64,000 nt of DNA from contig NC_088855.1 of NCBI RefSeq assembly GCF_963853765.1, positions 7,874,001 through 7,938,000 on the forward strand, written 5' to 3'. Below are positions 6,311-56,700 of this stretch, piece after piece. The stretch is from Magallana gigas. Lineage: Eukaryota. Every line of letters begins with the position of its first letter. The stretch's first letter is position 1. The notes beneath the pieces were generated by a model that had not been told where the DNA came from, did no database searches, and worked only from the letters and a program-made list of their open reading frames with translations. The position numbers and the translations under genes were made by a program.

Positions 6311-7237
6311 TCACCGAAGAACATTGTCAGAAAGTATTGAATACATAGTATCCTATAAAGATGATTTAAAAGCCTTCAGGTGTCTGTTAAAAGATTAGCC
6401 TCCAACGTTCTGACTGTAGCATTAATATTGGATGAAAAAGAGTCAACTCTTTACTTCATAATTGACTTCATAGTATAATTGTGCTGGGGGACGAAAAAAA
6501 AAGATAATATATAGAAATTTAATCTTGTGGTAGGTCGATATCAAACGCCAGTATGCACAATAATTCTCATCCACCTAATACTGTTCATCCCAGCCTAAAG
6601 AGTTGGTTTTATTCAATATAAAAACAACAGCGGGTTGTAAAATTATCACTTCGACGATCAATACAACAGCCTTAGATCCCCTATTTTTTCTATCATTCAA
6701 AATAAGAAAACATTGCCTTTTACAACCAAGCAAAAAATTTTCATTTTATTTATCCCAAAAGAAAAAAAAAGATATTTCCCTTCAAGTTTAAAGACAGAAG
6801 TGAAAATAAAATGACAATTAAATGAGTGGGATATTTTAGCCGCTGCACTAGTTCACTCTGCAAGATTTAAAATCCAATAACCATTTAGTTTCGATTGGCT
6901 TTAATTACTCTAACGGTGTGTTTGAAAATTAATAATACAATGCGCTCATTTTTTTTTCAAACTTGTTATCGTTGCAACAGCACATAACTCAAGCTTTTGT
7001 AATTCTTCCCATTTTAATTTCACTTTATCGATATCTGTTTCATTTTCAGCGCTAGTCCTGCTCATCTGAAAAAGCTCCAGGCTGGGTTGAAATCACCGAG
7101 CCAGCGCCGATCAATTATGCTCTGTTTGTTTGTGTATTCATTTATCACCCCCTGTTTTGATACATTTCTTGACATAATGTATAGGTAAAATAAAACGTCA
7201 TTCAAAACTATTGATCTTGATATTTGCAGGTTTAAAA

Positions 7238-10200
7238 ATGTCGTCTGCTTATAAGTCACGTGATTTAAATCCTCCCGGCAAAGTGCCAACGATAGAACTT
7301 GGCTACCCTGCAGTCGTACTTTTTACCTTCAGTCCAAGTGAGAAAGAATCTAGCGAGATCCCCGTTTTAGAGGGAGACATCGTGCAACTTCTATACAGCG
7401 TTGGAGGATGGGTGTTTATTCAAACTTATGAAGGAAATGTAGGGTATATTCCCCTTGACTTTTGTGGGCAGTTGGAAAGTTCCAAAGAGGTCGGATCTGT
7501 GTTCAAAAAAGATTTTCAGAAGGATTGCTACCCTGGACCCACTCACCCAGGCCACGAAGATGTGACTGATTTCCGCTTTAGGTTAGATCAAACTCGGGAA
7601 GCTTTCCCACCAAGAAAAAATTCTGAGAGTTTAAATGACAAATTAAGTTGTATACATGAAAGTTTAATAAATCGTGACGACCGCGTAAACAGAGAGTCAA
7701 AACATTGGAGTTTTTATACAGAACACGGGTTCAATACAACGGTCTTTGGAACAAGACAGCTAAACTCCTATAGTTCTGACAATGAGCTATCCTGTTTGAC
7801 GCAGTCGCTGTCGTGTGACATATGTAATGCATTTCTGTCTCGGTTGATCTCCGGAGTTCACAGTTTGGCCATAACTGATAAAGAAAAAGCGGATTTGAAA
7901 TCTCGAAAGCTACTTAAGCTATTGCAAAGAGCGACACAAGAAGGTCTGAATTTGATTTCCAATATAAGATATTTAACTGGATACGGACAGAAGTGTTGTG
8001 TTGGATTTAAAGAGAATGGAATTAGCTCTGGTAATGACCTGGACCACGAGCCGGTGCCAGAGTTTGGTGCGCAATGCATGCAATGTGAAATTTTAAGGGA
8101 ATATTTTAAATTGTCGGAAAAATACTCCATGACGGATTTATACGCTACGATTCGGGATCTGCATATCCACGCTTTAAGTGATTCAGATTCCGATCCCGAC
8201 TCTGGAACTCATATCAAATCTGCATCGTCGAAGAATGACTCGTCTAAAACGTGGGCCTCAAAACACGAAGAACCAAAATCAAGAAACGCTGAACTATTCT
8301 TAGCTTCGAAATCTCCCAATGAAATAAAGAGAAGCGTTTCGTTTCAACTGGAAGATAGGACTATGATTAAGTCGGAGATCATAAGAAACAATTCTTTTTC
8401 GGGGGAAATTCATTTTGCAAAGCCGAGTGAAGAGAAAACCGACGGAACGCAGAACAGAGAGTCCTTGCATTCGGGATATTCTCAAAAGACTGTAGACTCG
8501 GGCATAGCGGATGTTCACGATGACCTTGATTCGAGTTTTCACTTCGAGCACAGGTCGGAGTCTGTGGAAGATAAGGACGAGAATTGCAATGACAGAAAGG
8601 ACACCGCCTCGCCTGTGATCCAGTCAGACTCTAGTAAGACCCCTGACACGTTTGAAGGTTCCGGTGTGTATGGGTTTCAGGCATTGCTTCACTCGAAATC
8701 GTCCCTCTCACCGCGCATTTCCTCCACTAAACCTGGTGCTCAAAGAACACCACGAAATGAGGCTACTGTGAAAAGACAAGATGCATTTAAGCAAAAAACA
8801 ACCCCCTTTCTCGGGAAACCTTCCGCGAGGGAGAGTTTTCCTGCTCCTATTGTCGAACATAAAGCTTCCTTTCAACCATCTGTGTCCAAAATGTCGTTCT
8901 CACAACGAACATTTGACAAATCAAAAACACTTTCTGAAATGGAGCTTACGGTGTCTGGCGCTGGACCGCCCTTAGTTAAACTAGACGAGGCTGTCACAAA
9001 GACGGAGGGGGATCAATTGAAGCTTCCTGTCATGCGCAGTAGTGGGGAGGAGGCTGGGGCTGCTGACAAACGGAAAATATTAGCTCGACGTTTCCAGTCC
9101 ATGAAAAGCCCTCCGGATCTGCGCCAATCAGCAGGTATCAGAGATGCCGTGCATTGTTGCTAATCTAGTGCACTGATATTTGGCATCGTAGTTTTAATAA
9201 GCAATATGAGCTGCATTTTGAAGTCGATTTCTTTGAGCTTAATTGATTGACTTAGATGACAAATATAAAATGGCTTGAAAACTTCTATTAGTCGAATTGT
9301 AGTATGAATATGATTATGAATCTATCATTAAAGCAAAACTACGCCGTTGACGTCCTCTTTAAAATTGGATTGCTGTAACATTAAAGTTTAATAGTTCAGA
9401 GAATTTTACAACTATATATGGCCTTATAATATTTGGTTTTAATAGTATGTATTATTGGGGATTATGTTACATGCAGAATTATCACAAAATCATTTTTTTG
9501 GACAAAATAAAATTCTGAAAAATACGCCTCATATTGCTTTATATGAAAAGTGAACGTAAAAGTGTTGTTTGGTTTGCTCGAGTTCTAAATACCCACTAAA
9601 TTATTTGAATACTGGATATATCAAATACCTAACCTTCCAAAGTCAAATATCTTTATTCATTTTAGGGTCAAATATTTGTTTTCTAAAGCCAACAAGTGAT
9701 CATCGGAGAGAATAGGCTAGTGAGGTTATGTAAGAAGTCTTGCCAATATTTGGCGGATTTTTCCTTGAGTGCTCTCTTCCTTGGGCCTGTTTACTTTCCT
9801 CCTTTACATGACCAAAGTGTATCTTTAAACAATATTTATTTGGCAGAGGGAACAATTAAACGCCCAAAATGACAGCTTGCTACCCAAGTCACCCGCTTCA
9901 GTGACTTCTAGTTCCATATTTTTTTGTCTTTAAAGGCAAAAGGTTGGAAATGTTTAGACGATTAATACGAGCTTAACCTAATTCAAAATGATAAGTTTTG
10001 TAAAAATAGAGGAAAGAAAATCTTTCAAAAAAATATTTTCAGATGAGTTATCTTTTTGAAAAATGTTGTGTTTTCGAATAAAACTCATGGCAAGCCCACA
10101 TAGTTCAATTTGTATTGTGTGATTGAATTCCATCGCAAGCTTGCATTGGTAAAAAAAAAAAATCTTAAACCGTTATTTATATCGGATGTCCCAAAGTGTG

Positions 10201-34792: not shown

Positions 34793-35350
34793 TATAAACG
34801 TCTTTCTTTTAACTAATTAATTAATTGAATATAAAAAATTATTAAAATTCACTAAATTACTCTTAATGTACATAAGTACGTAAGCTAAAAGAAACAGCGA
34901 AACCGTCTCATGTGAGACTTCGAGTCTGACATTATCATGATTATTTCGTGTAGTCCGTGATTTTACCTAGGTCACAGGTTTCGACCAACTGATAAACAGG
35001 GCGTGTCAAGTTCAGTCCTGTCAGTTTTAGCCGCTGTAGACTTCGACCAATCGATAAACGGGGCGTGTAGATTTCAGTCTTGCTGTTTCTATAGAGCTAT
35101 TAATTAACTATAAGTGAGGAAATAATACTTGGTTGATGTTAATATAATGCAATGTAGAGTTTTATCTAAAAACTTCATACCAAATTTGAAAAGACCATGA
35201 ACAAATTTTTAAAATGAGTACACGGAAAAATGTGACAGATTACATGATTTTTTTTTTAATGAAAATTAAAACAAATCAAAACAGGAAGTAAATGTTCTTG
35301 TTGTTGCAACAGTTCTCGCTGTCGTATAGGATAACTTTCTGCGTTAAGCG

Positions 35351-36177
35351 TTAGAGAGACATGGGGTGACAGTGGCACAGGTGGTTATCACACGTGGCGT
35401 GGTGACCAGGATCACAGCCACACTCCTCGGGGTGGTTACACTCGTGTGTGCTGTGGTGACAGTAACACTTGCCGTGGTGGCAATGGGCAATCGTCCCATC
35501 TGCGCATGTGCAATCGCCATCGGTTACGCAAGTTTCCTTTGCTGCCCAAACTAGAAAATCAATTATAAAAAGTTTAAGGTACATGTTCCTATAATTTTTA
35601 ATGTTAGGAATTACTTGTCTAAAATTGGCATTCCACTTGGTTTAATTTATTGCATGAACTTCAGCAAATCGAATTGAGTACGATCAAATTAAGATAAAGT
35701 TTACTACGATACATCGTTTTACACGCATGCATTCTCAAAAGGTTTCAGGGTTATTTCAACGAATCATAATTACATGTAACTTCCATGTTGAAGGACTGGA
35801 CACACTAAGTATATAAACTATATACTTATATGTCATATGATGTAAATTTATTTTCAAATAATACTTATAATACAGATGAATAAGCTACTTTAGAAACATT
35901 AGTCAAGAATTTGTTCAAGTTTTAAAGACCGTGGCTTCTTATAATCTATAAATGAATACTAGTATCCCAAACGATTATATATAATAATTATATTTGGATA
36001 TATTAGACAATGTACGTGCAATGTTATTCGTGTATACTTTAGCGTGTCACAAAATATCGTACTTAAATTGCAAATCTGTCTCAAATTATTCATTATACAT
36101 TTAATCTTTACAAAACTAAGCATTGAACACTCACCAATGGCAAAGAATAAAATGCAAAAAGTGATCAATATCTTCAT
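35351..36177 (-). CDS. Secreted 12-Cys His-rich peptide A (I84/Cvsi-like), complement(join(36177..36135,35550..35351)), 80 aa
   Basis: Signal-peptide exon MKILITFCILFFAI with phase-1 donor GTGAGT, acceptor TTTTCTAG. Remainder VWAAKETCVTDGDCTCADGTIAHCHHGKCYCHHSTHECNHPEECGCDPGHHATCDNHLCHCHPMSL*. The family assignment is from recalled 12-Cys spacing, not a database search. Confidence 0.85.
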
Positions 36178-37037
36178 GCTTGTTGTCTGGATAGGGATGT
36201 GTGAAAACCTGACCACAAGCTCTGTCAGTTCCAAAATAGATGAACTGCAAAAGATAAGAACAAGCATAATGTACAAACACATGGGTCATATTTAAGTATG
36301 AGAAGTCTTTCACGTGGTGTCAAAATCAAGAATACAGCAAGAATTAGCCATCAGAACGAGAAAAAATCAGCGAGTTGGTCCTCAGTCAATAGGTGTGCGA
36401 GACTGACCGTTGGTTTCCATCGACGATCTACTAAAAGTATGAAAAGTATCTTTATAGCGAAATTCAACTCTCGTTTTAAAAGGTGCAGGTCCGTAGCTCT
36501 ACACCAAAATGAAATATAATCTAAAAACCGCCAGACCCCTCCCTCCCCCCCTCCCGGGAAAGATATTTCTGCATTAGCGCATGCATATGACATGGAAATA
36601 ATACAGCAACATTGAATAAAAATGTCATGCTTACATTGTCAAAAATGAGCATTGATGCATTGGCACATTTTCGTACGTTTCCGGCAGGATACTGATTTTT
36701 TGTCGTGTCGGAAAGACCCAAGAAATGGCATTCAATGATTGCCTTCTTTATTTCTGTTGACATCAACATACATGTAATAACGGAAACTTTATTTCATTTT
36801 AATTCATTACGTAATATACATGTTTTACATGTATATATACACACAACGTTTTTATCGTCCGCGAAAATTGTAAACTTTATTTTGCCTCACCTGCAAACAT
36901 TTTTCGATGATAATAAAAAATCCAACAATTCATAATCAAAATATATCTATGATTATTGACAGTTTACTGCGCTGCATGTAGCTTTCTAATCTTGTTCAAA
37001 CCAAGACTTGTATACGGTGATATATCTATAAGGAATA

Positions 37038-37178
37038 AGGAATCATTCTTTGAGTATTATGAGGTGATAATTTCGGTCGGGGCGTGATCAAATCCAATAA
37101 AGCCCGAAGGGCATTATGATAGATTTGATCACGCCCCGACCGAAATTATCACCTCATAATATTCAAAGATTGATTCCT
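37038..37178. repeat. Long palindrome with a GCCCGAAGGGC centre; a decayed relative lies at about 46105-46250
   Basis: TTATGAGGTGATAATTTCGGTCGGGGCGTGATCAAATC and its reverse complement. Confidence 0.85.
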
Positions 37179-37998
37179 CATTACTTATGTTTATATAATT
37201 TTAAGCCATCGTACGATTAAATATTTAGATATAAATAAGCAAACTCCGCTGGCGCCTCAATTTGGAGTCATTTGTATTATGGGTTATATAGTACAAAATC
37301 GATACGTAGTGTTATCATAGGCAAAGACACTGGAAAATGTAAATATAAGGTAATAAGGCTATAAAATTTTGGATCAGTGGTATATATCTCCTTTGTTTTG
37401 ATAATTTGGAAATCAAGGATAGAAAAAATTAAGATTTTGATAAAATCTAATCAAATATTCAAGATATGATCTTGACATTCTCAATAGAGAATTTTTGTTC
37501 ACTAATCAACGAAAAACAAGAAAAAAAACCCCCAAAATAAATGCAAGATCAAAGATGTCGACATCGACCGGGGAAAAATGAACGCGCTTCCGTAACTTGT
37601 ATTTTAAACACGCTATAATATTCAGACAATTCCGCATCAACAACTTTTTTGTAGAGTCAGTATTCAATATCTTACCGCATTCCTGATTTGAGCGATGATC
37701 ATAGATATTAACAGTACTCTTCGTTTCATTTCGTTTTATGACAGTTTTGAGCAGATCTTTGTTTATATACTTTCTCTATTTCTTGCAAATCTTTATTAAA
37801 AATGCTCCAACCAGAACATAAATACAAACGTTTATCTATACATGCACATATTTATTTTCAGAATGAATTTATTTGAACAATATATACACTCTTTGTCTTT
37901 GATAACTGCAAAACAACAAAAACACGATATTGAATATAGTATGAATAACTATAACTTAAATAAGAATAACTATTATAGTAATTTAAGTAATTTGCATT

Positions 37999-38001
<3 letters not shown>

Positions 38002-38049
<48 letters not shown>
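38002..38049. repeat. (GA)n microsatellite just 3' of the peptide gene B stop codon
   Basis: Directly visible, 16 bp past the stop on the minus strand. Confidence 0.95.
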
Positions 38050-38050
<1 letters not shown>

Positions 38051-38065
38051 GCACTATTTCACGGT

Positions 38066-39077
38066 TTAGTGGGGTGTTGTGGGGTGGCAGTGACAGAGGT
38101 GATGGTCACAGGTGGGATAGTGGTCAACATCACAGGCCGCGCACTCGTCCGGGTGGTGACATTCGTGGGTACTATGGTGACAGTAGCACTTCCCGTGGTG
38201 ACAGTGCGGGAACGTCCCCGCGGCGCATTGACAGTCGGCGTCCACCGTGCAGTCGTCTTTCAGGGCACCGGCTACAAAATCTGATAAATATGACCCGGAT
38301 ACGTTGTAGACATAGTCAAACTTAAAAACTCTGGTATCATCGTCACCAAAATTTTCAGACTTCCATATTGTAGATGTGTTAAACAATAATAGCCAAAAGT
38401 ACAAAGCGGTACATGAACGTAATACGATGAGGACATGGTCAAAAATTGAGATAGCGACCACAAAATGTGATTTAAAAACGTGAAATGTGGTAGACATAGT
38501 CAGACTTGAAGGACTCAACTACACATTGTAAAACATGAACGCAAAATGTTGTATTTTAACGTGAAACGTTTTAGACACAGTCACATATAACCTTTTATGA
38601 CTCGACTAAAAGTAAATGGACGTGAAGTTTATGTGTGGCAGTCAAACATGAAGACTCAGTCTGACAATATATTCATGTAAATATATGTAAATAACAGGTG
38701 TCAATTTCAACTGTTACCCTCCCAAACAGGCACAATTTATTTTATCATACTAAATGTCTTAATATTAGAGAAAATTTTACTGCTTTAATGTAGAAATGAC
38801 ATGAATTCTACAGCGAACTGTACGCACATAATTTACGCGCATGTAACAATGCGTTGTGTTACCCGTTGCCAACTGTGTTGCTAACGCTGAGGGTGATAGA
38901 AGGGATAATCAACTGCGTCTAAACCATCAGATTTCAGTGTTTAACGTGAACAAATATAAAGCAATGCAGACATATACTTCTAGACAGCGACAGCATGAAT
39001 TAAAATGTATCATTATTATACATAAGATGCTTACCCAATGTCAAACACAAAACACAGAAAATAACTAAATTCTTCAT
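38066..39077 (-). CDS. Secreted 12-Cys His-rich peptide B (I84/Cvsi-like), complement(join(39077..39035,38271..38066)), 82 aa
   Basis: Exon 1 MKNLVIFCVLCLTL with phase-1 donor GTAAGC, acceptor TTTTGTAG. Remainder AGALKDDCTVDADCQCAAGTFPHCHHGKCYCHHSTHECHHPDECAACDVDHYPTCDHHLCHCHPTTPH*. Confidence 0.85.
38695..38950. mobile_element. Partial copy of the 15055-15425 element, inside the intron of peptide gene B
   Basis: GGTGTCAATTTCAACTGTTACCCTCCCAAACAGGCAC...GCTAACGCTGAGGGT...CAGATTTCAGT is colinear with about 15163-15410. Confidence 0.8.
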
Positions 39078-40238
39078 TGCTTTCAGACAGCTAGGAGAGA
39101 ATGAGACTAAGTGGATCAAGGAACACGATAGCACAGGAAACAACAAGACAAGATAAGACTGACGTTTTCATTAAGTACATAAATCTGACTTTGGGGACTC
39201 ATACGAATGATTCTGTTCCTTAATTGATGAAATAAATGTGGCTGAGAAGTGCGTGTACCACTATTTCCTAATAAACCATAATTAGCTCCTTACATACCAC
39301 TGTACTTAAACCTTTAGAGTTTTGAGGAAAAAATCCGAAATAAATGAAATTCATCTTTTATGTACAACATTTTCAACAAGCTTCATAGTAACCCTACCGA
39401 GTTCTTTCCTTGATATATCATTCTAAAAGTCCAGCAATTTTCACGAGGTTAAACTCATGTTGAAACCCAGTGGATTGAATTATATATGTAACTGTTATGA
39501 AAACAGTTTAAACAGCACAGCGGATATGCTGTTTTTAATTGGAAACATGAAGACCCAGAGAAAGGAGAAATCTTGCCCCATTATCATAGGACCATAGTCG
39601 GCGCAAGCGCTGTACCTTGCGGAAATACCGAGCGACTGGATACAAGTCCGAGTTGCTGAAGATCTAAAACATTTATACGGAAACGAAATGTTCTTCTCCT
39701 GCATAACTCAGCGTCAGATTAGCAGAAAGCATTCATGTAATGACTCAATGTTCAATTTGATTTGAGCGTCGGGCAACTCTGTACTCTTGAACAACAACCG
39801 ATCTTTCGAGGAGAAAGGAAAGGGAGAATTAATAATTTTGTTATAAATAATCTCTTGGTTTTTACATATTAACTCATACTGAGACCTCAAGCTCCCAGGG
39901 ACTCTAACTTTGAAGAACGTTGACCAATCGAGACGAGACATCACCTTCTATTTTATAGATCTTGAAAAAGAACCACTTTACATCGCACCTTCGTAAGGTT
40001 CGAACCATAACCAAAAGATCTCTTTCTAAGCCTGGAGTCCGTTAAGTAAAAAACCGCGTCACAGATTACGCAAAAAGTTAGTGCTGGGAAAATAACACAA
40101 AAAACCAATCACACACACTGACATTCCAAGTTATTTATTTTAGCATGACTTACTTATAATGTACAATTGACAATTTCACGAACATTTAATTATGTTTTGT
40201 TGCACCATTTGCTGATTGATGATCCACGTATTGGAAAA

Positions 40239-40585
40239 TCAAGCGTGATGTAAGCAGTGACACAAATGGTTATCACATGAGGGGGTACGATTGTGATCGC
40301 ATGTGCAGTCGTTGTCAAAGTTACACTCGTGTCCACTCATTTGATGACAGTAGCACTGTCCCATGTGACAGTGTGGCATAGTATTAGCAGCACATGTGCA
40401 GTCGACTGTAGTTGTGCACGTGTTTTGTGCAGCAATAAGTGTGCATGCTGTAGCAAATAGTAAAATAGGTTCTATTGCAATATGTTTCAAAAATATTAAT
40501 ATTCAATGAAAAATAAATCACAAAAACACAGCTGGTGGAACTTACTTAAAGAAAAAATCAAACATAGACCAAAAAGCTGCTTCAT
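40239..40585 (-). CDS. Secreted 12-Cys His-rich peptide C (I84/Cvsi-like), complement(join(40585..40546,40447..40239)), 82 aa
   Basis: Exon 1 MKQLFGLCLIFSL with phase-1 donor GTAAGT, 98-bp intron, acceptor CTACAG. Remainder TCTLIAAQNTCTTTVDCTCAANTMPHCHMGQCYCHQMSGHECNFDNDCTCDHNRTPSCDNHLCHCLHHA*. Confidence 0.85.
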
Positions 40586-40640
40586 ATTGATGACAACAAG
40601 ACAACTGCAGAGAGAATCCACATGTAAATGTGCCCTTTGA

Positions 40641-40648
40641 TTTATATA
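40641..40648 (-). promoter_or_regulatory. TATA box of peptide gene C
   Basis: TATATAAA on the minus strand, about 55 bp upstream of the ATG. Confidence 0.55.
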
Positions 40649-42277
40649 TAAGCAACTTTAGAGATAACATATATAAACCATTTTGAGGATAAGATCAAGG
40701 ACATAACATTCGCTGTTAATGCTAACTTGTGCAACTATCGTGATATTTAGATTCGGTTGTGTCCTATATTAATTCTGTATTTCTTCATGTTGTTTCTTGC
40801 ATATGGCATATATACACTGTAGAAGGCAATGTCTTTTGAAATACATGTAGATTGCTGTCAAATAAAAATTAAACAATTCTTCACTTTATTGCAGAACAAA
40901 TTCAGAGATAAAAAAAACCCTTTGGAGAGAATATTGCATAAACTAAGTAAACCTATTTTTTAGGCACACTAAACAGCTTGTTTTCCATTGAGAGTTTTTA
41001 AGAAATATAAAACATTGGTCAACAATATAAAAAAAAAATATTTTGCACATTTTGTAGATAATGTTTTGTTCGCCAAAATGTCGGTAGTTCGTTCGGTTTC
41101 TCTTGGCTTATCGCGTTAGACACAGTGTACGTGAAGTCTGTCTTTATCTCAAGGTGACCTCCAGAGATTATCCTTCGAAGAGTTCACTGAACCTGGGACT
41201 TGTCCGCCTTGACCTGTGCAGTAGTCTTGAATGTCGTCATAAGAACTGCATGTGTCAAAGTATTGTATTCCGATGCTTTTTGTATACTGTGAGTAATTTT
41301 GATATGTTTTCTTTGGTGTTTCAGGTGGGTATGAAGGTTGCAATCACAGCAGGACACGGGTTATGTGAATATTTTGCAAGATCACAACCTTCATAGCCCG
41401 TATGAAGCATCAAATAGCATTTTGATGTTTTAAATCACGTTAAATTAAATTTTTCTTTGAACCTCTCCTCAATTATCCATGTATGTGAGTACAATTTATT
41501 GTTGTATCTGTAACCCAAGGGGAAGGGGTATTCCTAATTTATATCGGATTTTTTGCTAAAAAAATTATGGAAAGTGTGGAATCAACATTGATAATGTAAT
41601 ATGAATTTTTAGGCATTTTTATGTGAAGGGCATACAATGAGGTTTAAGTTTGTGTCTTTATAAATACATACAATGAAGCGCATTGAAGTGGTAAAAATTT
41701 TCGTTCGAATGGAATGTTCTAAACTTTGTATCGAACGTCAATTGTTACATAAGACACGCCCATTTCTTTTGAAACGAGGAAAACAGTATTCGTCACAATG
41801 CTTTCGGAACCGCCACTCTTCTAAACAGCACAAGCAGGAATTTCACACACGTGCATTATACACAAAAACACACATAAACACACTTTTTTCTTTTGAAATA
41901 TATGTTCAGAAACAGTGATATTGTTCAAAATAAAGAGTGAAGAATATTTTTAGTAACAAATTTATTATTGTGACGAATACTATTTTCCTCGTTTCAAAAG
42001 AAATGGGCGTGACTTATGTAGCAATTGACATTCGATACTTTAGAACATTCCATTCAAACGTAAAATTTTACCACTTCAATGCGCTTCATTGTAGAAAAAT
42101 ACAGCTGCAAAATACGATGGCTGTTTCTGGTACGTAAATTTGTATTAAAAAGCATGAACCTATTTTAATGTGTGGGGTATCAATATAATGTTAATTATGT
42201 GAACCTGAAATAGTTATTATACAATAAAAATATAATCTTGTCGATATACATTGTTGCTCAGGTAAGCGCATCTTCCC

Positions 42278-42347
42278 AAGTCAAGGGTTTCTGATCCGCT
42301 CCGCTCTACATAAACATAGAGCGGAGCGGATCAAAAACTCTTGACTT
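42278..42347. repeat. 70-bp palindrome
   Basis: AAGTCAAGGGTTTCTGATCCGCTCCGCTCTA ... TAGAGCGGAGCGGATCAAAAACTCTTGACTT. Confidence 0.8.
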
Positions 42348-42723
42348 AGCAATACGGGGTAAGAGATGTGCTTGAAAATAGTATAAAGGTTTTGATAGTC
42401 TTTTATTTGTGATTGTCATTTATCTCACCATAGAGTCATGAGATTTAAATCAATACCTTATAGAAACACATCTGTGAGACAGATGAATCCCCTGTATCGG
42501 ACACAAATTCTTTGTACGATTACTGGAAAACAAACAATTGCATGTAATTAATTGTTTTTTCTTGAGAGAACGTATCATTACACAACAGTTAGATACTCAT
42601 CGAGAATGAACAAACGTTGTAGCTAAGACACGGAATATACTGATAATGTATTTATAGCCAAACGTCTGTCTAGAAAATAAATGTATATATTTAGGGAGAA
42701 AAAGACCACCAAAATTATATAAT

Positions 42724-44346
42724 ATAATGTAAAGATGTTGTGAGTTATATCATATAGTATACTGTAAAGGTGTTGTGAGTTATCTCATATAGTATACTGT
42801 AAAGGTGTTGTGAGTTATATAGTATACTGTAAAGGTGTCGTGAGTTATATAGTATACTGTAAAAGTGTCGTGAGTTATATAGTATACTGTAAAGGTGTTG
42901 TGAGTTATATTGTATACTGTAAAGGTGTCGTGAGTTATATCATATAGTATACTGTAAAGGTGTCGTGAGTTATATAGTATACTGTGAAGGTGTTGTGAGT
43001 TATATCCTATAGTATACTGTAAAGGTGTTGTGAGTTATATAGTATACTGTAAAGGTGTTGTGAGTTATATAGTATACTGTAAAAGTGTCGTGAGTTATAT
43101 AGTATACTGTAAAGATGTTGTGAGTTATATTATATTGTATACTGTAAAGGTGTCGTGAGTTATATCATATAGTATACTGTAAAGGTGTTGTGAGTTATAT
43201 CACATAGTATACTGTGAAGGTGTTGTGAGTTATATCATATAGTATACTGTAAAGGTGTCGTGAGTTATATTATATAGTATACTGTAAAGGTGTTGTGAGT
43301 TATATCCTATAGTATACTGTAAAGGTGTTGTGAGTTATATCCTATAGTATACTGTAAAGGTGTTGTGAGTTATATAGTATACTGTAAAAGTGTCGTGAGT
43401 TATATAGTATACTGTAAAGGTGTTGTGAGTTATATTGTATACTGTAAAGGTGTCGTGAGTTATATTATATTGTATACTGTAAAGGTGTTGTGAGTTATCT
43501 CATATAGTATACTGTAAAGGTGTTGTGAGTTATATAGTATACTGTAAAGGTGTTGTGAGTTATATAGTATACTGTAAAAGTGTCGTGAGTTATATAGTAT
43601 ACTGTAAAGGTGTTGTGAGTTATATTGTATACTGTAAAGGTGTCGTGAGTTATATCATATAGTATACTGTAAAGGTGTCGTGAGTTATATAGTATACTGT
43701 GAAGGTGTTGTGAGTTATATCCTATAGTATACTGTAAAGGTGTTGTGAGTTATATAGTATACTGTAAAGGTGTTGTGAGTTATATAGTATACTGTAAAAG
43801 TGTCGTGAGTTATATAGTATACTGTAAAGATGTTGTGAGTTATATTATATTGTATACTGTAAAGGTGTCGTGAGTTATATCATATAGTATACTGTAAAGG
43901 TGTTGTGAGTTATATCACATAGTATACTGTGAAGGTGTTGTGAGTTATATCATATAGTATACTGTAAAGGTGTCGTGAGTTATATTATATAGTATACTGT
44001 AAAGGTGTTGTGAGTTATATCCTATAGTATACTGTAAAGGTGTTGTGAGTTATATCCTATAGTATACTGTAAAGGTGTTGTGAGTTATATAGTATACTGT
44101 AAAAGTGTCGTGAGTTATATAGTATACTGTAAAGGTGTTGTGAGTTATATTGTATACTGTAAAGGTGTCGTGAGTTATATTATATTGTATACTGTAAAGG
44201 TGTTGTGAGTTATATTATATAGTATACTGTACAGGTGTCGTGAGTTATATAGTATACTGTAAAGGTGTTGTGAGTTATATCATATAGTATACTGTAAAGA
44301 TGTTGTGAGTTATATTATATAGTTTACTCTAAAGGTGTTGTGAGTT
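42724..44346. repeat. About 1.6-kb minisatellite of 30/35-bp units (AGTATACTGTAAAGGTGTTGTGAGTTATAT with or without a 5-nt insert), roughly 50 copies
   Basis: 30-bp period is directly visible (e.g. 43021-43080). Longer units carry CATAT, CCTAT, TATAT or CACAT inserts. Confidence 0.95.
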
Positions 44347-45071
44347 TTACTTCACCACATCTCAATTTTTATGGTCTGAACTTATACTGCGTTTAAATCT
44401 CTGTTTTTCAATCATTTGTGAACATGAATGATAACATAACAATAAGAAATTATGATGGTGACGAAATATATCCTGCCATACAGTCATGTATATAAAAAGT
44501 GTGTATTCTTTTATTTATTTGATGGTTTAAAAATTAAAGAAGTATAAAAAAAATGGCGTGGTTAATTACTGCACTTGTTTGCATATCATGATGGGGTTCG
44601 ATAGGGTAGACATTTATTCCCTTCTTAGTTTTTTAAATGTAAACACTTAATTAATTTGGAGGGCGTTATGTCAGGCAAATGTGTTTGTAAAGTATTACAT
44701 GTGAAGTTGTTTTATTCAGATCTCTGTTGATGATATAGCTTTATAACCAAAAGTACATGTACTGATACTGATGGCCAACAAAACGCATTGAAGGATTTTG
44801 TGTATACTTGTTAGGAACTGAATGTTAATGATGACAATACAAAGACTATTTAGTATTTTCTAGAGGGTTAATATCTATGCATTTATTTAAAAACAAATTG
44901 GGCATCTGATCGCAGCACTTTGCTCAAGGATATCGTTGGACGATATGTCGTCAAAACAAAGCCAATATACCGACTGAGAGTCATATTGGCCAAGAATTAA
45001 TTAAGGCTTGTCAATATATCGATACAAAAAGAAAAAAAGACAAATTGCCTTGTAATGTAACATTTATAGGA

Positions 45072-45797
45072 TTACGCCGGGTTACAATGGCAATGATGGT
45101 GGTCACAAGATGGCGTCTCATTGTCAGCACACGTGCATTCGTTGGCATGGTTGCATTCGTGGACATGGTGACAGTGACATGAGCCGCCATGACAGACGGC
45201 GCTCTGGCCTTCATGGCAATTCATTGCTGCGCAGTCTGTGTCTGATGTGCAGGACTGGCTGAGGGCAACTCCTATGAATTAAGATGGCCACGTCGAAAAC
45301 TTAAATCTTATAAAACTTAAATTAAGGGGGCTGAATGGTCGAAAGCATATTTTTGGCTACTTAAATCTCCTTAGAGGAAGAGCTTTGTATGTTAAACGAT
45401 GTTATAGGAAAACATTCACATTTTGAAGACTTAATATTTAGATTTTTCTTCAATAAACAATAATTTAGACTTAAAATATCTTAAACTAGATCTGATGGAT
45501 AATTTTGTCAACCATCCAGCCTCCTTAAATTTGACATTCCAATTCATGAAGCTGTAGAATAGAAGCTTTCCAGGAATAGGTTTGGTATCGAGCTCGTCTT
45601 CCATTCTTTGTCTGGAGAGCAACGGTTCTACAGCTTTATAACAATGTAAATACTTGTACAAAATATAAAATACATGCATACATACTGTATTTACCTAAAC
45701 ATTAAAAAAATATAATCATAACCAATTAAAATATATCGAATTTGTTAAATTACGTACCCAGCATACAAATTATACTTAAAACGACAAAGGTTCTCAT
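45072..45797 (-). CDS. Secreted 12-Cys His-rich peptide D (I84/Cvsi-like), complement(join(45797..45758,45271..45072)), 79 aa
   Basis: Not captured in this frame by the ORF track. Exon 1 MRTFVVLSIICML with phase-1 donor GTACGT, acceptor TTCATAG. Remainder GVALSQSCTSDTDCAAMNCHEGQSAVCHGGSCHCHHVHECNHANECTCADNETPSCDHHHCHCNPA*. Confidence 0.85.
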
Positions 45798-45846
45798 GAT
45801 TGCGGTAAGTAATAATACATGTACTTATCTATTTAAGATTCCAACT

Positions 45847-45854
45847 CTTATATA
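45847..45854 (-). promoter_or_regulatory. TATA box of peptide gene D
   Basis: TATATAAG on the minus strand, about 50 bp upstream of the ATG. Confidence 0.5.
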
Positions 45855-46722
45855 TCAGGCAATGTACTCGTGATCAAAGCATTGATAAGGCGGTTAATTT
45901 CCCCGACCACGTTTCGTAATAATGATCCGTTGTTTCACCTTTTAACTAGGTTACCTCAAATCTATTATATTTACATTTTCAGTGTCTTTGTCTACGATAA
46001 AAGTACAAATCGATGTTGTAATTGAAGGTTTAATACATTTCACCAATGACTATTTTCATATTTAATCGTATAATTACTGAAAATTATTTAAATAGAAGAA
46101 ACAAGGAATCGTTCTTTGAATATAATAAGGTGATCAAATAAGATCGGACTTGATCAAATCTATCAAAAAGCCCTTCAGGCTTTATTAGTTTTGATCACTT
46201 CCGATCACCCCATAATTACACTCTAAGAATTATTATCCATTAATATTCCTTACTTAATGCATCAGTTCACTAGTCTAGAGTCGAAATTTGCCAAATATTT
46301 CTTTCATCAGTTCAAGTTTCAAGTTCATTTATTCTCTCCAACCACACAAAGATTGCACATGAGGTACAAAACGTAATAACGTGACGTCAGAGGAGGGCAT
46401 GTATACAAAATAAAAGGGGGGGGGGAATGATGACATATACAAACATAAAACAGAAAGATTTATGGAGGTGTGACGGTGTCATTGCTTTTTGAAATAAAAA
46501 TACAGTTTTTGGGAGTTGATTTTAATGGACCTAAGCACAAATCATCACCGCTGACAAGACTTAGTTCTTGAAAATAATAGAAAAATCCGATGTAATGTAT
46601 GCTGAAGCATTGTTTTTTAAGGAAACTTTTTATAAACACTTTGAAAATAGTCAGATTTTATATAATACGAACAATTTAGATATTTTGTAGTCTTCTGTGT
46701 TCCTACGCCAGAGTTTAATAAA

Positions 46723-53746: not shown

Positions 53747-56700
53747 TCAGAAAGAAGCTTGTTGGATTCTACTTTGTGGAACTTCCTCGATAAAATAACC
53801 TGGGCAGAAATACAAGTCCTTAGACAAGGTGTAGCTGCTCTCAGAAATCGCCACAAATTCTTTGTTCTGTTTGTTGTCTTTTGCCCTTCCTCGTGATACC
53901 AGCTGATTAACCTAAAATATCAAAAACATTGTCTTATAAACCTTAGTTCACATACACATAACAATCCAATGTAAACCTTTAAGTGCATGTTATAAATAAA
54001 TTTTCAATCTTTTTTTATCCAGTCCATGCAAGGAGCTTTTTAACAGATCAGGAGTAAAAGAACTCTCCAATTATTTTAATTCATTGAAATGTTTGCTATT
54101 TATTGCATTAGTTTTATATTTTTACAGGAAAAACTCAGATCCATAATGATATTTAATCATAAAACACAGTGAACAAATTGACAATTCATGTTACACAATA
54201 TATGGTGTATGTGTACCACAGATCTGGATCTCTGCTCTAAGTCTCACACTTAAATCTACTATGGTAAATGAGTAGCATTTATCTAACCACCTTATAACAA
54301 TAAGAGGAACATGAGGCAAAAGCCCAGTTGGAGACCTGGAAAATTCTTACCTTTGTAAGCATCTGATGAATGTCATTTGTATGAGAATATTTGGCAAAAA
54401 CGTAAGCTACAGCTGTCAGAAACCAGGACCCGTATATTTTGTTCCGATAGGAAACCATGCCTGTTCAAATTTCACATGTACAATTAAATGGAAAAATTTG
54501 ATGATGATGATTATGAAGATGATGATGATGATGATAATGACTATGATTTCAGCCCTGTCAGTTTTTATAGAGTACAGTAGTGAAGCACAATCGGTTTTCT
54601 TAAAGAGATATTACAATGCATAAGTAAATATTATGTGATGATAATGCTGTAGGTAATTATAAATATGAAGGTTGAGAAGATTTCACTATGAGAGGATTTT
54701 GGTTTTCATGATAAATAATGATGATGTGATGATTATTTTACAATGATGATAATTAAATATGGATGATGCATATATTATACTATTTAATATAAAAAAAATG
54801 AAAAAGCATGATGATGATGATAATGATGAAATAGGATGATCTGATAATCATATTATAATGATGGTTATACTATGATGATAATGATGATGATACAATGATG
54901 ACAATGAAGAAGTTAAAATTATTCAATTGTAACACATGACGTTGGGTGACAATGTATGAAAAACCAGTTGCAATAGCTCACCTGAGTCACTAATGTGATC
55001 TGAAATTTAACTTAACAGGAAACCTGAAGGATGAAAAATAAGGAATGATTCTAAGCAAAACTTACCTAAAGTTGATGCCATGGCAACAACCATGTGACTC
55101 ATTGTAGCTGTGACACTCTCACTTTTGGAATCTGAGACAGTGTTTAAGGACAAGTCCTTTAGTATTTCTCCTGTGGATTTTATTTCCTTTTCAATATCTG
55201 CAGCTGTCTCTTTCACACCTTCGTCTTTTGTTTCTAAATTCATATATAAGTAAAGCTAATCAATTTATTATCATTGATAAATTTCCTTTGCATACATATC
55301 TGACAATTCAATTCAAAATCAAACAATTAAATTCCAGGAACATATCTATGAATTTGTGACTATGGCCTAATGACTAAAAATCAGTTAGGGTCTACACATG
55401 TAGCTTCAAGTTTTAGAGTTACCATGAATGGCATGATATAAAGTTTTATTTTAAAGGCTCTACAAAAATGAAGTAAATTCATTAAATTACTGTAAAATCT
55501 GGAAACCATTTCAAATATTGAATTTCTGAACTTGATTTTTTTACTTCAAAATTAACAGCCCTATTCTCTAAGCCTTAGATATGCAACAAAAGGCTAAAGG
55601 GAGGACGGAAGTTGACATTATTGCGACATACTTTGGGTAATCCCTTCCAAATACTAGTACATGTATAGCATTCAAAGGCATCAGTTTTAATTTGATCAAC
55701 GTACAAGTTTGAAAACTGATGTTTTAACTTTTATCACACAAAGTTTATATAAACATGTTTATAAAGGCATACATTTTGAAAAATTGACACAAACACACAG
55801 AGCAGGGAAATCTCAGACCATTTACATAAATGTGACATTTTCCGTCCTCCCTTCAGCCTTTGTCACATATCTTAGGTAGTAGAAGCCAATTGAGGGGTGA
55901 TTATTAATAATGACAGGTGTAATACACTGTTCTGGTTGAATCAGATGTATGCTTAGGTGCTGAAGGACCGATCGGAAGATAGAGATGATCACAAAGTAAT
56001 TTTACTGATGAGTTTTAAGCAAAAATTCCACATGATGTGACAGTTTTAAACAAATCAAATATGGCGGCGATGTGTACCTTGTGTATTTTTTAGGGTATAG
56101 AGTGTATATATTAATACATATAAATGTCATGAGCCTGTGTAAAAGATGCATCATTTTATGAACGTTTAAATCCTTTAATATTTTCATTGTAGGCCTGAAA
56201 AGGGCTGTGTAGGCAGACAGACAGACTGGTGGACAGACAGATGGACAGACAGATGTACCTCCTCTACATGCTTGAATAAGAAGGACTTTGGGTTTGTCGG
56301 CCATTGCAGGGAAGTTCTCTCCATTCAACAGCATTTTGATTTCTTCTATGGAGACCGTTTTGCCGTCCACACCATATATCGCTCCTGACGTTCCATGAGT
56401 CATTATCACCAAAACAAAACAATCTGCTTTATGATGAAAATCTTTTTTCACCTCCTCTTTTAGTAACGCCTTGATTTCCTTGAATGAGAAAATTTACTTT
56501 CCAAAACTTTTTAATTGAATTAAATTTAATTAAATTTCTACATGTGATTCGATCATAAAGGGACCTACATATCAGTAATATGTAGGTGACATTATTACAC
56601 TAAGACCCACAACCATTTTCACATTAATTGACCCATTTAACCTCCACACTTAACTTTTGCCATTTTCATGAATCTTTCACTATTCTTATAAACATTTATC

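What the first reader, a model, noticed from the sequence alone, without database searches (positions are those of the whole stretch)
35351..45797. Cluster of four secreted twin-module 12-Cys peptides that are unusually His-rich: candidate metal-binding offshoot of the I84 inhibitor family
Seen: four same-strand genes share a signal-peptide exon, a phase-1 intron and a mature exon made of two modules C-x5-C-x(1-4)-C-x(6-7)-C-x4-C-x-C. The ~62-68-aa mature regions hold 12 Cys and 12, 14, 9 and 11 His (A-D), often as HCHH, CHC and DHH, with many Asp/Glu and almost no Lys/Arg. Established: oyster I84 (Cvsi) inhibitors are small secreted 12-Cys proteins, oysters accumulate Zn and Cu, and His/acidic clusters bind these metals. 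Inference: these paralogues may be extracellular Zn/Cu carriers, metal-dependent antimicrobials or adhesive/matrix components rather than, or in addition to, protease inhibitors.
Basis: partly seen in the sequence, partly recalled or inferred. Interest (0 to 1): 0.72.

Follow-up and report, generated by a model that had tools for sequence, protein, structure and literature searches.

The report
Histidine-rich Cvsi/Hic7-like oyster peptide cluster
Four neighbouring Pacific oyster genes make small secreted, disulfide-locked peptides unusually rich in conserved histidines. They are distant kin of mollusc I84 protease inhibitors and closer kin of a pearl-mussel shell protein, and are plausible but untested zinc/copper binders.

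Summary
Four minus-strand genes (A-D, window 35351-45797) each have a signal-peptide exon, a phase-1 GT..AG intron and one exon with two 6-Cys modules. Mature peptides are 61-66 aa with 12 Cys, 9-14 His (14.5-21%), 6-10 Asp/Glu and 0-2 Lys/Arg. RNA contigs and raw reads carry the exact predicted splice joints of A, B and C. D matches a Magallana gigas UniProt model.

Paralogues are old (synonymous sites saturated, dN 0.19-0.46). His is kept better than other residues: 11/12 against 19/39 versus the Ostrea edulis orthologue.

A profile search of 1.84 billion proteins found 17 relatives; every one that a source names is molluscan. They include Hic7, a published Hyriopsis nacre matrix protein. 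The best Swiss-Prot fold matches are Cvsi-2 and Cvsi-1. Profile comparison with canonical I84-like genes of the same genome aligns all 12 Cys (score 36 against 11±2.4 when shuffled).

This branch still differs from canonical I84. It splits off at 99/87 support, has both modules in one exon, has a shortened C2-C3 loop, and carries twice the His.

Verdict: a real, expressed His-rich branch of the I84 superfamily. Metal binding is plausible but untested, and protease inhibition could not be tested.

The parts
36135..36177 (-). Gene A, coding part of exon 1 (14 codons plus 1 base, signal peptide). The transcript reaches at least 36245.
   Evidence: Sequence. Spliced RNA contigs cover 36135-36245 (X5) and 36135-36525 (X2).
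35551..36134 (-). Gene A intron, 584 nt, GTGAGT..TAG, phase 1.
   Evidence: Joint 35550>36135 is seen in X2 (depth 150), X5 (depth 422) and 3 raw reads of X21.
35351..35550 (-). Gene A exon 2 coding part with stop. It holds the end of the signal peptide and the 63-aa twin-module mature peptide (12 Cys, 12 His).
39035..39077 (-). Gene B, coding part of exon 1 (signal peptide). The 5' UTR reaches at least 39124.
   Evidence: Contigs cover 39035-39124 in X1 and X5.
38272..39034 (-). Gene B intron, 763 nt, phase 1. An alternative acceptor at 38280 adds 9 nt (DFV) inside the signal peptide. The intron holds an interspersed repeat at 38558-38919.
   Evidence: Joints 38271>39035 (X5 depth 392, X21 1 read) and 38280>39035 (X1 depth 44).
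38066..38271 (-). Gene B exon 2 coding part with stop. The mature peptide is 65-66 aa with 12 Cys and 14 His.
40546..40585 (-). Gene C, coding part of exon 1 (signal peptide).
   Evidence: Joint.
40448..40545 (-). Gene C intron, 98 nt, GTAAGT..CAG, phase 1.
   Evidence: Joint 40447>40546 in X5 (depth 206).
40239..40447 (-). Gene C exon 2 coding part with stop. The mature peptide is 62 aa with 12 Cys and 9 His. The stop TGA at 40239-40241 is TGG in many public contigs.
45758..45797 (-). Gene D, coding part of exon 1 (signal peptide).
   Evidence: The whole 79-aa product equals UniRef A0A8W8JS14_MAGGI.
45272..45757 (-). Gene D intron, 486 nt, GTACGT..TAG, phase 1.
45072..45271 (-). Gene D exon 2 coding part with stop. 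The mature peptide is 61 aa with 12 Cys and 11 His. Module 1 keeps the canonical x4 C2-C3 loop.

Best explanation
The window is from the Pacific oyster Magallana gigas. It holds a tandem cluster of four old, expressed paralogues.

Each encodes a secreted mini-protein of about 7 kDa. The protein is built from two homologous 6-Cys modules, each a short turn plus a beta-hairpin, presumably locked by three disulfides per module.

The genes belong to a His-rich branch of the mollusc-specific I84/Cvsi superfamily. That branch is separate from the canonical inhibitor genes, and its only characterised member is the nacre matrix protein Hic7.

Shown:
- gene structure;
- splicing and expression of A-C;
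- family relationships;
- purifying selection;
- preferential conservation of His.

Inferred:
- The conserved His lie at i/i+2 positions on the hairpin strands (H20, H22, H27/H29, H33 in module 1; H54, H57, H59 with invariant D52 in module 2). They would form solvent-facing His ladders on an acidic scaffold.
- These ladders would chelate Zn2+ or Cu2+ outside the cell, in plasma, extrapallial fluid or shell matrix.
- Net charge would flip from about -6 to -8 at pH 7.4-8 to about +2 to +5 at pH 5.5.

Whether the ancestral subtilisin-type inhibitory activity is kept is open.

Expression:
- Exact spliced joints of A, B and C occur in RNA contigs of two to three runs each. Stranded raw reads fit a minus-strand RNA.
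- D equals a UniProt M. gigas protein.

Selection:
- Synonymous differences are saturated (28-31 of 31-35 synonymous sites) while dN is 0.19-0.46. The copies are therefore old and constrained.
- His kept against other non-Cys residues: 11/12 against 19/39 for A versus Ostrea edulis and for A versus B (p=0.008).
- H29, D52 and H57 are invariant in 15 family sequences. H22, H27 and H33 are His in 10-11 of 14-15.

Family:
- 17 profile hits were found in 1.84e9 representatives. Every one that a source names is a mollusc. Most are 11-21% His, and Hic7 is among them at E 1.9e-6.
- Hic7 is a published shell and pearl matrix protein. [quoted passage not shown]

Link to I84:
- Foldseek ranks Cvsi-2 first and Cvsi-1 third in Swiss-Prot.
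- hhalign scores 36-38 against 11.0±2.4 for shuffles.
- The tree split has 99/87 support.

Structure and charge:
- AF2 model with pLDDT 83 and two hairpins.
- Charge profile.
Against: - No metal-binding measurement exists, and none can be made here.
- No MRE core (TGCRCNC) lies within 1 kb upstream of any gene. The window holds 13 sites against 20 expected.
- Canonical I84-like paralogues are already moderately His-rich (6.5-9.7%), so enrichment is a matter of degree.
- Hic7 itself has only 12% His.
- His could instead serve pH-dependent binding or inhibition.
- The tissue of expression is unknown.
Confidence: 0.45

Rival explanations
1. They are ordinary I84 serine-protease inhibitors for host defence against subtilisin-like proteases of parasites and bacteria. 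The extra His is incidental, or only tunes the pH dependence of inhibition.
For: - Best Swiss-Prot matches are Cvsi-2 (E 5e-3, 30% identity) and Cvsi-1.
- They share the 12-Cys twin-module scaffold, signal peptide, size and acidic pI described for I84.
- They show a collinear profile match to canonical I84-like genes.
- I84 genes also occur as tandem clusters.
Against: - The branch is separated from canonical genes by a long, well-supported split.
- The profile search of 1.84e9 proteins returned only 17 hits, none carrying a Cvsi or I84 name apart from the Ostrea 'Cvsi-1-like' orthologue.
- Gene structure, the C2-C3 loop and the CTC motif all differ.
- His is conserved better than other residues, which is not expected if it were incidental.
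- The characterised relative Hic7 is a shell matrix protein.
Confidence: 0.25
2. They are shell-matrix or extrapallial-fluid proteins like Hic7. They would be secreted by the mantle and built into, or would regulate, the calcium carbonate shell. The acidic residues would bind Ca2+ or mineral, and His would mediate pH- or metal-dependent assembly. This overlaps with the best explanation.
For: - Hic7 (QAV56621.1) is a family member at whole-library E 1.9e-6 and 44% identity to peptide A.
- It is cited as taking part in shell and pearl formation.
- It was detected by mass spectrometry in nacre.
- Net charge is -4 to -8 at pH 7.4-8.
Against: - No tissue or proteome evidence exists for the oyster genes.
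- Hic7 was a trace component of nacre.
- Protease inhibitors and immune peptides are also commonly trapped in shells, so presence in a shell does not show a mineralising role.
Confidence: 0.3
3. They are pH-switched or metal-starving antimicrobial peptides. They would be anionic and inert in sea-water-like plasma, then become cationic in acidified compartments, or they would withhold Zn/Cu from microbes.
For: - The calculated charge flips between pH 7.4 and 5.5 because of 9-14 His.
- They are secreted, small and disulfide-stabilised.
- From my own knowledge: tick microplusin and hebraein, and tunicate clavanins, are His-rich peptides that work this way.
Against: - They lack the amphipathic or cationic character of membrane-active peptides at body pH.
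- No homology to any known antimicrobial peptide family was found.
- Nothing is known about induction by infection.
Confidence: 0.12

Closest known systems
MEROPS family I84 (cvSI-1, cvSI-2, cvSI-3 of Crassostrea virginica; scSI-1 to scSI-14 of Sinonovacula constricta)
   Same: - Mollusc-only.
- Signal peptide and a mature peptide of about 60-70 aa.
- 12 Cys arranged as two 6-Cys modules, ending in C-x4-C-H-C.
- Acidic pI.
- Tandem gene clusters.
- Best Swiss-Prot fold and sequence matches.
- Collinear profile match to canonical-like genes of the same genome.
   Different: - His is 14.5-21% against 6.5-9.7%.
- The C2-C3 and C8-C9 loops are 1-2 residues instead of 3-6.
- The hallmark C-T-C is replaced by C-(Y/H)-C-H.
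- Both modules lie in one exon instead of one exon each.
- A separate clade at 99/87 support.
- Inhibitory activity is unknown.
Hic7, shell and pearl matrix protein of Hyriopsis (Sinohyriopsis) cumingii (QAV56621.1; Zhang et al. 2021, Comp Biochem Physiol B 256:110640, cited in PMC10969987)
   Same: - Same family by profile search (E 1.9e-6 over the whole library; E 3.4e-13).
- 79-aa precursor.
- All 12 Cys plus the C-H-C-H..H-E-C and C-D..C-H-C motifs are shared.
- Described as Cys/His-rich in the nacre proteome preprint.
   Different: - Hic7 has 12% His and 6 Lys/Arg, so it is less acidic.
- It keeps the long C2-C3 loop.
- It comes from a freshwater unionid.
- Its shell role rests on work I could not read in full.
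- No shell or mantle data exist for the oyster genes.
His-rich poly-module proteins: Lottia gigantea LOTGIDRAFT_177037 and the M. gigas array at G000:C5:55.63-55.66 Mb
   Same: - The same C-x5-C-x-C-x7-C-x4-C-x-C module, 46-59% identical to module 1 of peptide A.
- His-rich C-terminal flank (CHCHP.. against C-HHDGGHHP).
   Different: - Single modules are iterated many times (at least 26 exons in the oyster).
- Modules are separated by His-Pro-rich linkers and preceded by dibasic RR.
- They are not twin-module peptides.
Functional analogues only (from my own knowledge, not tested): tick microplusin/hebraein, histidine-rich glycoprotein GHHPH repeats, mussel foot protein 4 and preCol His-rich flanks
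   Same: Secreted His-rich sequences that bind Cu2+ or Zn2+ outside the cell, for microbial metal starvation or metal cross-linking of materials.
   Different: No sequence or fold relationship was found.

Membership tests
MEROPS I84 (Cvsi-type inhibitors) | N-terminal signal peptide and a secreted mature peptide of about 70 aa and 8 kDa with acidic pI (PMC9198434) | tested here: met
   Hydrophobic 16-20 aa N-termini have small residues at -3 and -1. Mature peptides are 61-66 aa. Calculated pI is 6.1-6.4.
MEROPS I84 (Cvsi-type inhibitors) | 12 conserved Cys in the array CX5-8CX4-5CX7-9CX4CTCX6-23CX5-7CX3-6CX5-8CX4CXC | tested here: inconclusive
   The number and order of Cys fit, as do most spacings. 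C2-C3 (x1 in A-C; x4 in D) and C8-C9 (x1-2) fall outside the published ranges. The linker of D is x5. C-T-C is replaced by C-Y-C or C-H-C.
MEROPS I84 (Cvsi-type inhibitors) | Detectable similarity to the type proteins cvSI-1 and cvSI-2 | tested here: met
   The similarity is distant. Foldseek ranks Cvsi-2 first (E 5e-3, 30% identity, 66 columns) and Cvsi-1 third (E 1e-2) in Swiss-Prot. Scsi-2 appears in the AFDB clusters. hhalign to canonical-like paralogues gives probability 92-94%, about 10 sd above shuffles. However, hmmsearch over 1.84e9 proteins gave no canonical I84 at E<=1e-3. I could not obtain the cvSI sequences for a direct alignment.
MEROPS I84 (Cvsi-type inhibitors) | Typical gene structure: three exons with one 6-Cys module per exon (razor clam; also seen in canonical-like M. 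gigas loci) | tested here: not met
   Both modules lie in one exon in A-D, in the C3:3.598 Mb gene and in the Ostrea edulis orthologue. This feature is typical of the family rather than defining.
MEROPS I84 (Cvsi-type inhibitors) | Tight inhibition of subtilisin-family serine proteases | not testable with these tools
A biochemical assay is needed.
MEROPS I84 (Cvsi-type inhibitors) | Restricted to Mollusca | tested here: met
   All hits that carry an organism name are bivalves or a gastropod.
Hic7-like shell matrix proteins | Sequence similarity to Hic7 over the whole twin-module peptide | tested here: met
   E 1.9e-6 and E 3.4e-13. Hic7 is 44% identical to A, with all 12 Cys, H29, D52 and H57 shared.
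Hic7-like shell matrix proteins | Mantle expression and presence in the shell matrix | not tested
   The tissue of the RNA runs is coded or unknown. No oyster shell proteome could be searched with these sequences.
Metallothionein | Cytosolic protein without a signal peptide, with Cys thiolates as metal ligands and few His or aromatic residues | tested here: not met
   A signal peptide is present. The even, conserved Cys framework is typical of disulfides. The peptides have 9-14 His and contain Tyr and Phe.
CS-alpha/beta defensins | A C-x3-C helix paired to a C-x-C strand, with an alpha-helix packed on a beta-sheet | tested here: not met
   There is no C-x3-C. The AF2 model has no helix of 4 or more residues and only two hairpins. 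Nothing in the PDB matches above noise.

The most novel reading that the evidence does not exclude
A disulfide-locked 'His-ladder' module derived from the I84 inhibitor scaffold is used across molluscs as an extracellular transition-metal handling and cross-linking device. In oysters it would appear as twin-module peptides (this cluster and C3:3.5 Mb) and as giant poly-module proteins with dibasic sites and HHP linkers (C5:55.6 Mb). Together these would form part of the long-sought extracellular Zn/Cu-binding capacity of oyster plasma, extrapallial fluid and shell.
Probability: 0.2. Interest if true: 0.8.

Novelty: new variant of a known kind. Interest (0 to 1): 0.5.

Why it matters
Oysters concentrate zinc and copper to extreme levels, and the extracellular ligands are only partly known. 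A conserved, expressed family of secreted His-rich mini-proteins is a concrete and cheap candidate to test.

The work also ties together two literatures that appear unconnected: the I84 (Cvsi) protease inhibitors of mollusc immunity and the Hic7 shell and pearl matrix protein.

In the protein collections searched, genes A-C appeared only as raw ORFs from sequencing-run contigs, not as spliced models. They would therefore be invisible to proteomics of shell, plasma or mantle secretions unless they are added to the search database.

Tried and rejected
- Pfam gave nothing above cut-off, only weak Nodulin_late, EB and EGF noise.
- PDB sequence search gave nothing.
- Foldseek against the PDB gave no match at E<=1e-3.
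- VIA-align wide gave only the Ascaris carboxypeptidase inhibitor 3fju_B at Z 2.6, which is noise level.
- The ESM Atlas feature search gave only scores below 0.8.
- Three attempts to obtain canonical cvSI/scSI sequences fell short. A family-profile word search returned only family members. A bait made of the published razor-clam motif consensus found no candidates. The same bait on the own genome gave only weak hits (E 0.26-1), though these did lead to canonical-like I84 genes. Those loci are called 'canonical I84-like' from their Cys array, C-T-C motif and exon-per-module structure, not from a named match.
It gives no evidence either way and I did not try again.
- The MRE scan found no site in the four upstream regions.
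- Literature searches for LOC105343973 and for the Lottia protein number found nothing relevant.
- The Hic7 paper itself is not held.
- The look-up of encoding contigs for gene D found no record.
- The Ostrea edulis locus shows only one such gene within ±10 kb, so no tandem cluster is seen there.
- The metallothionein and CS-alpha/beta defensin readings were rejected (see the membership test).

Full report
**What is there**

Reading the minus strand of 35300-46100 and rebuilding the coding sequences by script gives four two-exon genes.
- Each starts with a 40-43 nt coding exon holding 13-14 codons of signal peptide plus one base.
- Each has a GT..AG intron in phase 1, of 584, 763, 98 and 486 nt.
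- Each ends in a 200-209 nt exon that finishes the signal peptide and encodes the whole mature peptide.

Precursors are 80, 82, 82 and 79 aa. Mature peptides are 63, 66, 62 and 61 aa. Each has 12 Cys, and His counts are 12, 14, 9 and 11. D+E is 9/10/6/8 and K+R is 2/2/1/0.

Each peptide is two copies of C-x5-C-x(1,2,4)-C-x7-C-x4-C-x-C joined by 5-7 residues. The paralogues match each other at tblastn E 1e-19 to 1e-35. Module 1 matches module 2 at about E 1e-4, which points to an internal duplication. No further copy lies elsewhere in the window.

**Are the genes real and used?**

One reads call on 35300-40700 covered genes A-C.
- Gene A: joint 35550>36135 appears in contigs of two runs (k-mer depth 150 and 422) and in 3 raw reads.
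- Gene B: joint 38271>39035 appears in one RNA contig (depth 392) and one raw read. An alternative acceptor 9 nt upstream (38280) appears in a third run. It adds three residues inside the signal peptide.
- Gene C: joint 40447>40546 appears in an RNA contig (depth 206).

Introns carry no depth apart from two interspersed repeats. In the stranded poly-A run, all first mates over the exons lie on the + strand, as expected for a minus-strand RNA.

The own-genome search found no intron-less copy that could mimic these joints.

Gene D was outside the stretch laid. Its 79-aa product is identical to UniRef A0A8W8JS14_MAGGI. That match also identifies the organism as Magallana (Crassostrea) gigas.

**Evolutionary state**

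Between paralogues, 28-31 of 31-35 synonymous sites differ, which is saturation. dN is only 0.19-0.46. The copies are therefore old and held by purifying selection.

His is kept better than other non-Cys residues:
- A versus the Ostrea edulis orthologue: 11/12 against 19/39.
- A versus B: the same figures (one-sided Fisher p=0.008).
- Versus D: 7-8 of 12-14 against about 25% (p 0.03-0.04).

In a 15-sequence family alignment, the 12 Cys plus H29, D52 and H57 (peptide A numbering) are invariant. H22, H27 and H33 are His in 10-11 of 14-15 sequences. Variants of A and B in public contigs change no Cys or His.

**Family**

Pfam and PDB sequence searches are empty.

A profile of six sequences, searched by HMMER against 1.84 billion representatives, gave only 17 hits at E<=1e-3. 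The sources give these names:
- M. gigas uncharacterised proteins;
- Ostrea edulis 'serine protease inhibitor Cvsi-1-like';
- a C. virginica protein with two twin units, mis-named integrin beta-5-like;
- two Sinanodonta woodiana hypothetical proteins (21% His);
- Hyriopsis cumingii Hic7;
- a Lottia gigantea poly-module protein with His-rich linkers;
- an Argopecten protein mis-named MEGF10.

Hic7 is cited as a matrix protein that takes part in shell and pearl formation. It was detected by mass spectrometry in nacre, where the authors note its Cys/His-rich low-complexity character.

**Relation to I84**

The published definition of the family was taken from PMC9198434: signal peptide, a mature peptide of about 70 aa, 12 Cys in a given array, pI 5-6, and three exons with one module each.

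An AlphaFold2 model of peptide A (pLDDT 83) shows two hairpins, each preceded by a short turn. Searched against 550,129 Swiss-Prot models, it ranks Cvsi-2 first (E 5e-3, 30% identity over 66 columns) and Cvsi-1 third. Razor-clam Scsi-2 appears among the AFDB clusters. No solved structure matches.

I could not fetch the cvSI sequences. Instead I located canonical-looking I84 genes in the same genome at C2:24.25 Mb (four in tandem), C5:50.77-50.79, C5:30.84 and C5:25.32 Mb. They have the C-T-C motif and one module per exon.

hhalign of the His-rich family profile against six of them aligns all 12 Cys collinearly. The score is 36-38 and the probability 92-94%. One hundred column-shuffled controls gave 11.0±2.4 with a maximum of 18.4.

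A maximum-likelihood tree puts the six canonical genes on one side, and the 15 His-rich/Hic7-like sequences on the other, of a single strongly supported long branch (99/87). There is no resolution inside either group.

The cluster is therefore a distinct branch of the I84 superfamily. Compared with canonical I84 it has:
- roughly twice the His (14.5-21% against 6.5-9.7%);
- C2-C3 and C8-C9 loops shortened to 1-2 residues (D module 1 keeps x4);
- C-(Y/H)-C-H instead of C-T-C;
- no intron between the modules. This last trait is shared by the O. edulis orthologue and by the C3:3.598 Mb gene.

**Mechanism**

This section is inference. In the model, the strands are residues 18-22/25-29 and 47-52/55-60. 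With two-residue turns, the Cys of each strand point to one face. Residues 20, 22, 27, 29 and 48, 50, 52, 55, 57, 59 point to the other. That outer face is where the conserved His and the invariant Asp52 sit. Cross-strand i/i+2 His pairs of this kind are classic Zn2+/Cu2+/Ni2+ sites.

The calculated net charge is -4 to -8 at pH 7.4-8 and +2 to +5 at pH 5.5. The peptides could therefore also act as pH switches.

Taken together with the Hic7 relationship, I favour extracellular metal binding in plasma, extrapallial fluid or shell matrix (confidence 0.45). The main rivals are retention of plain I84 inhibitor function and a shell-matrix role.

Points against the metal reading:
- there is no measurement;
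- no MRE core lies upstream of any gene;
- canonical I84s are already moderately His-rich;
- the tissue of expression is unknown.

**Wider context in the genome**

The same His-rich module recurs at two other places.
- C3:3.546-3.598 Mb holds three genes. One ORF has one module-1 unit followed by four module-2 units separated by HHPRRAV.
- C5:55.63-55.66 Mb holds at least 26 single-module exons. Each is preceded by RR and followed by an HHDGGHHP-type linker. This resembles the Lottia protein.

His-richness is therefore a property of a whole mollusc-wide module family, not an oddity of this one cluster.

**Verdict**

This is a real, expressed and conserved feature: a new variant (a His-rich, Hic7-like branch) of a known kind (I84 twin-module peptides). 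The metal-binding idea is reasonable and cheap to test, but nothing here shows it.

Noticed in passing
G000:C5:55,632,288-55,660,565 (+), loci L007-L025: At least 26 single-module exons (C-x5-C-x-C-x7-C-x4-C-x-C) fall into four module types. Each follows a dibasic RR and ends in an HHDGGHHP-type His/Pro linker. This looks like a giant poly-module His-rich gene or genes, resembling Lottia LOTGIDRAFT_177037. Gene boundaries and expression were not examined.
   Followed up: partly
G000:C3:3.546-3.598 Mb (L004, L006, L008): Three further His-rich genes lie on the same chromosome. One is a twin-module peptide with 12 Cys and 12 His. Another ORF has one module-1 unit and four module-2 units separated by HHPRRAV, which may be convertase sites.
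   Followed up: partly
window 40239-40241 (-): The TGA stop of gene C reads TGG (Trp) in many public contigs (for example P0036, on 74 contigs). That extends the peptide by 34 aa with 3 extra Cys, so this is a stop/read-through polymorphism. The RNA contig of run X2 carries the window's stop.
   Followed up: partly
protein P0008 (library entry matching gene A): This 'protein' is gene A with every His read as Tyr, Ala as Val and Thr as Ile. That is the signature of C-to-T bisulfite-converted reads assembled and translated, so it is a database artefact and not a paralogue.
   Followed up: no
window 42714-44346: A 35-bp minisatellite of about 50 copies (87% matches) lies between genes C and D. 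It causes the strong GC skew of that bin and produces many short repeated ORFs.
   Followed up: no
window 36929-37471 and 38558-38919: These stretches show very high RNA depth on both strands, and 92% of the raw reads laid in this call run on into unlike sequence. They are probably interspersed repeats or transposon fragments. The second lies inside the intron of gene B.
   Followed up: no
window 38002-38049: A perfect (GA)24 microsatellite starts 17 nt after the stop codon of gene B, inside its 3' UTR region.
   Followed up: no
window 42450-42578 (-) and gene D: The older RefSeq model XP_019929154.1 (190 aa) joins gene D, just before its stop, to an exon about 2.5 kb downstream. This is probably a read-through or mis-spliced model. 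The 79-aa UniProt model agrees with the sequence.
   Followed up: partly
window 56002-56451 (-) and 7211-9163 (+): A caspase-like exon with the QACRG active-site motif lies at 56002-56451. A 650-aa open frame lies at 7211-9163. Both are neighbouring genes with no evident link to the cluster.
   Followed up: no
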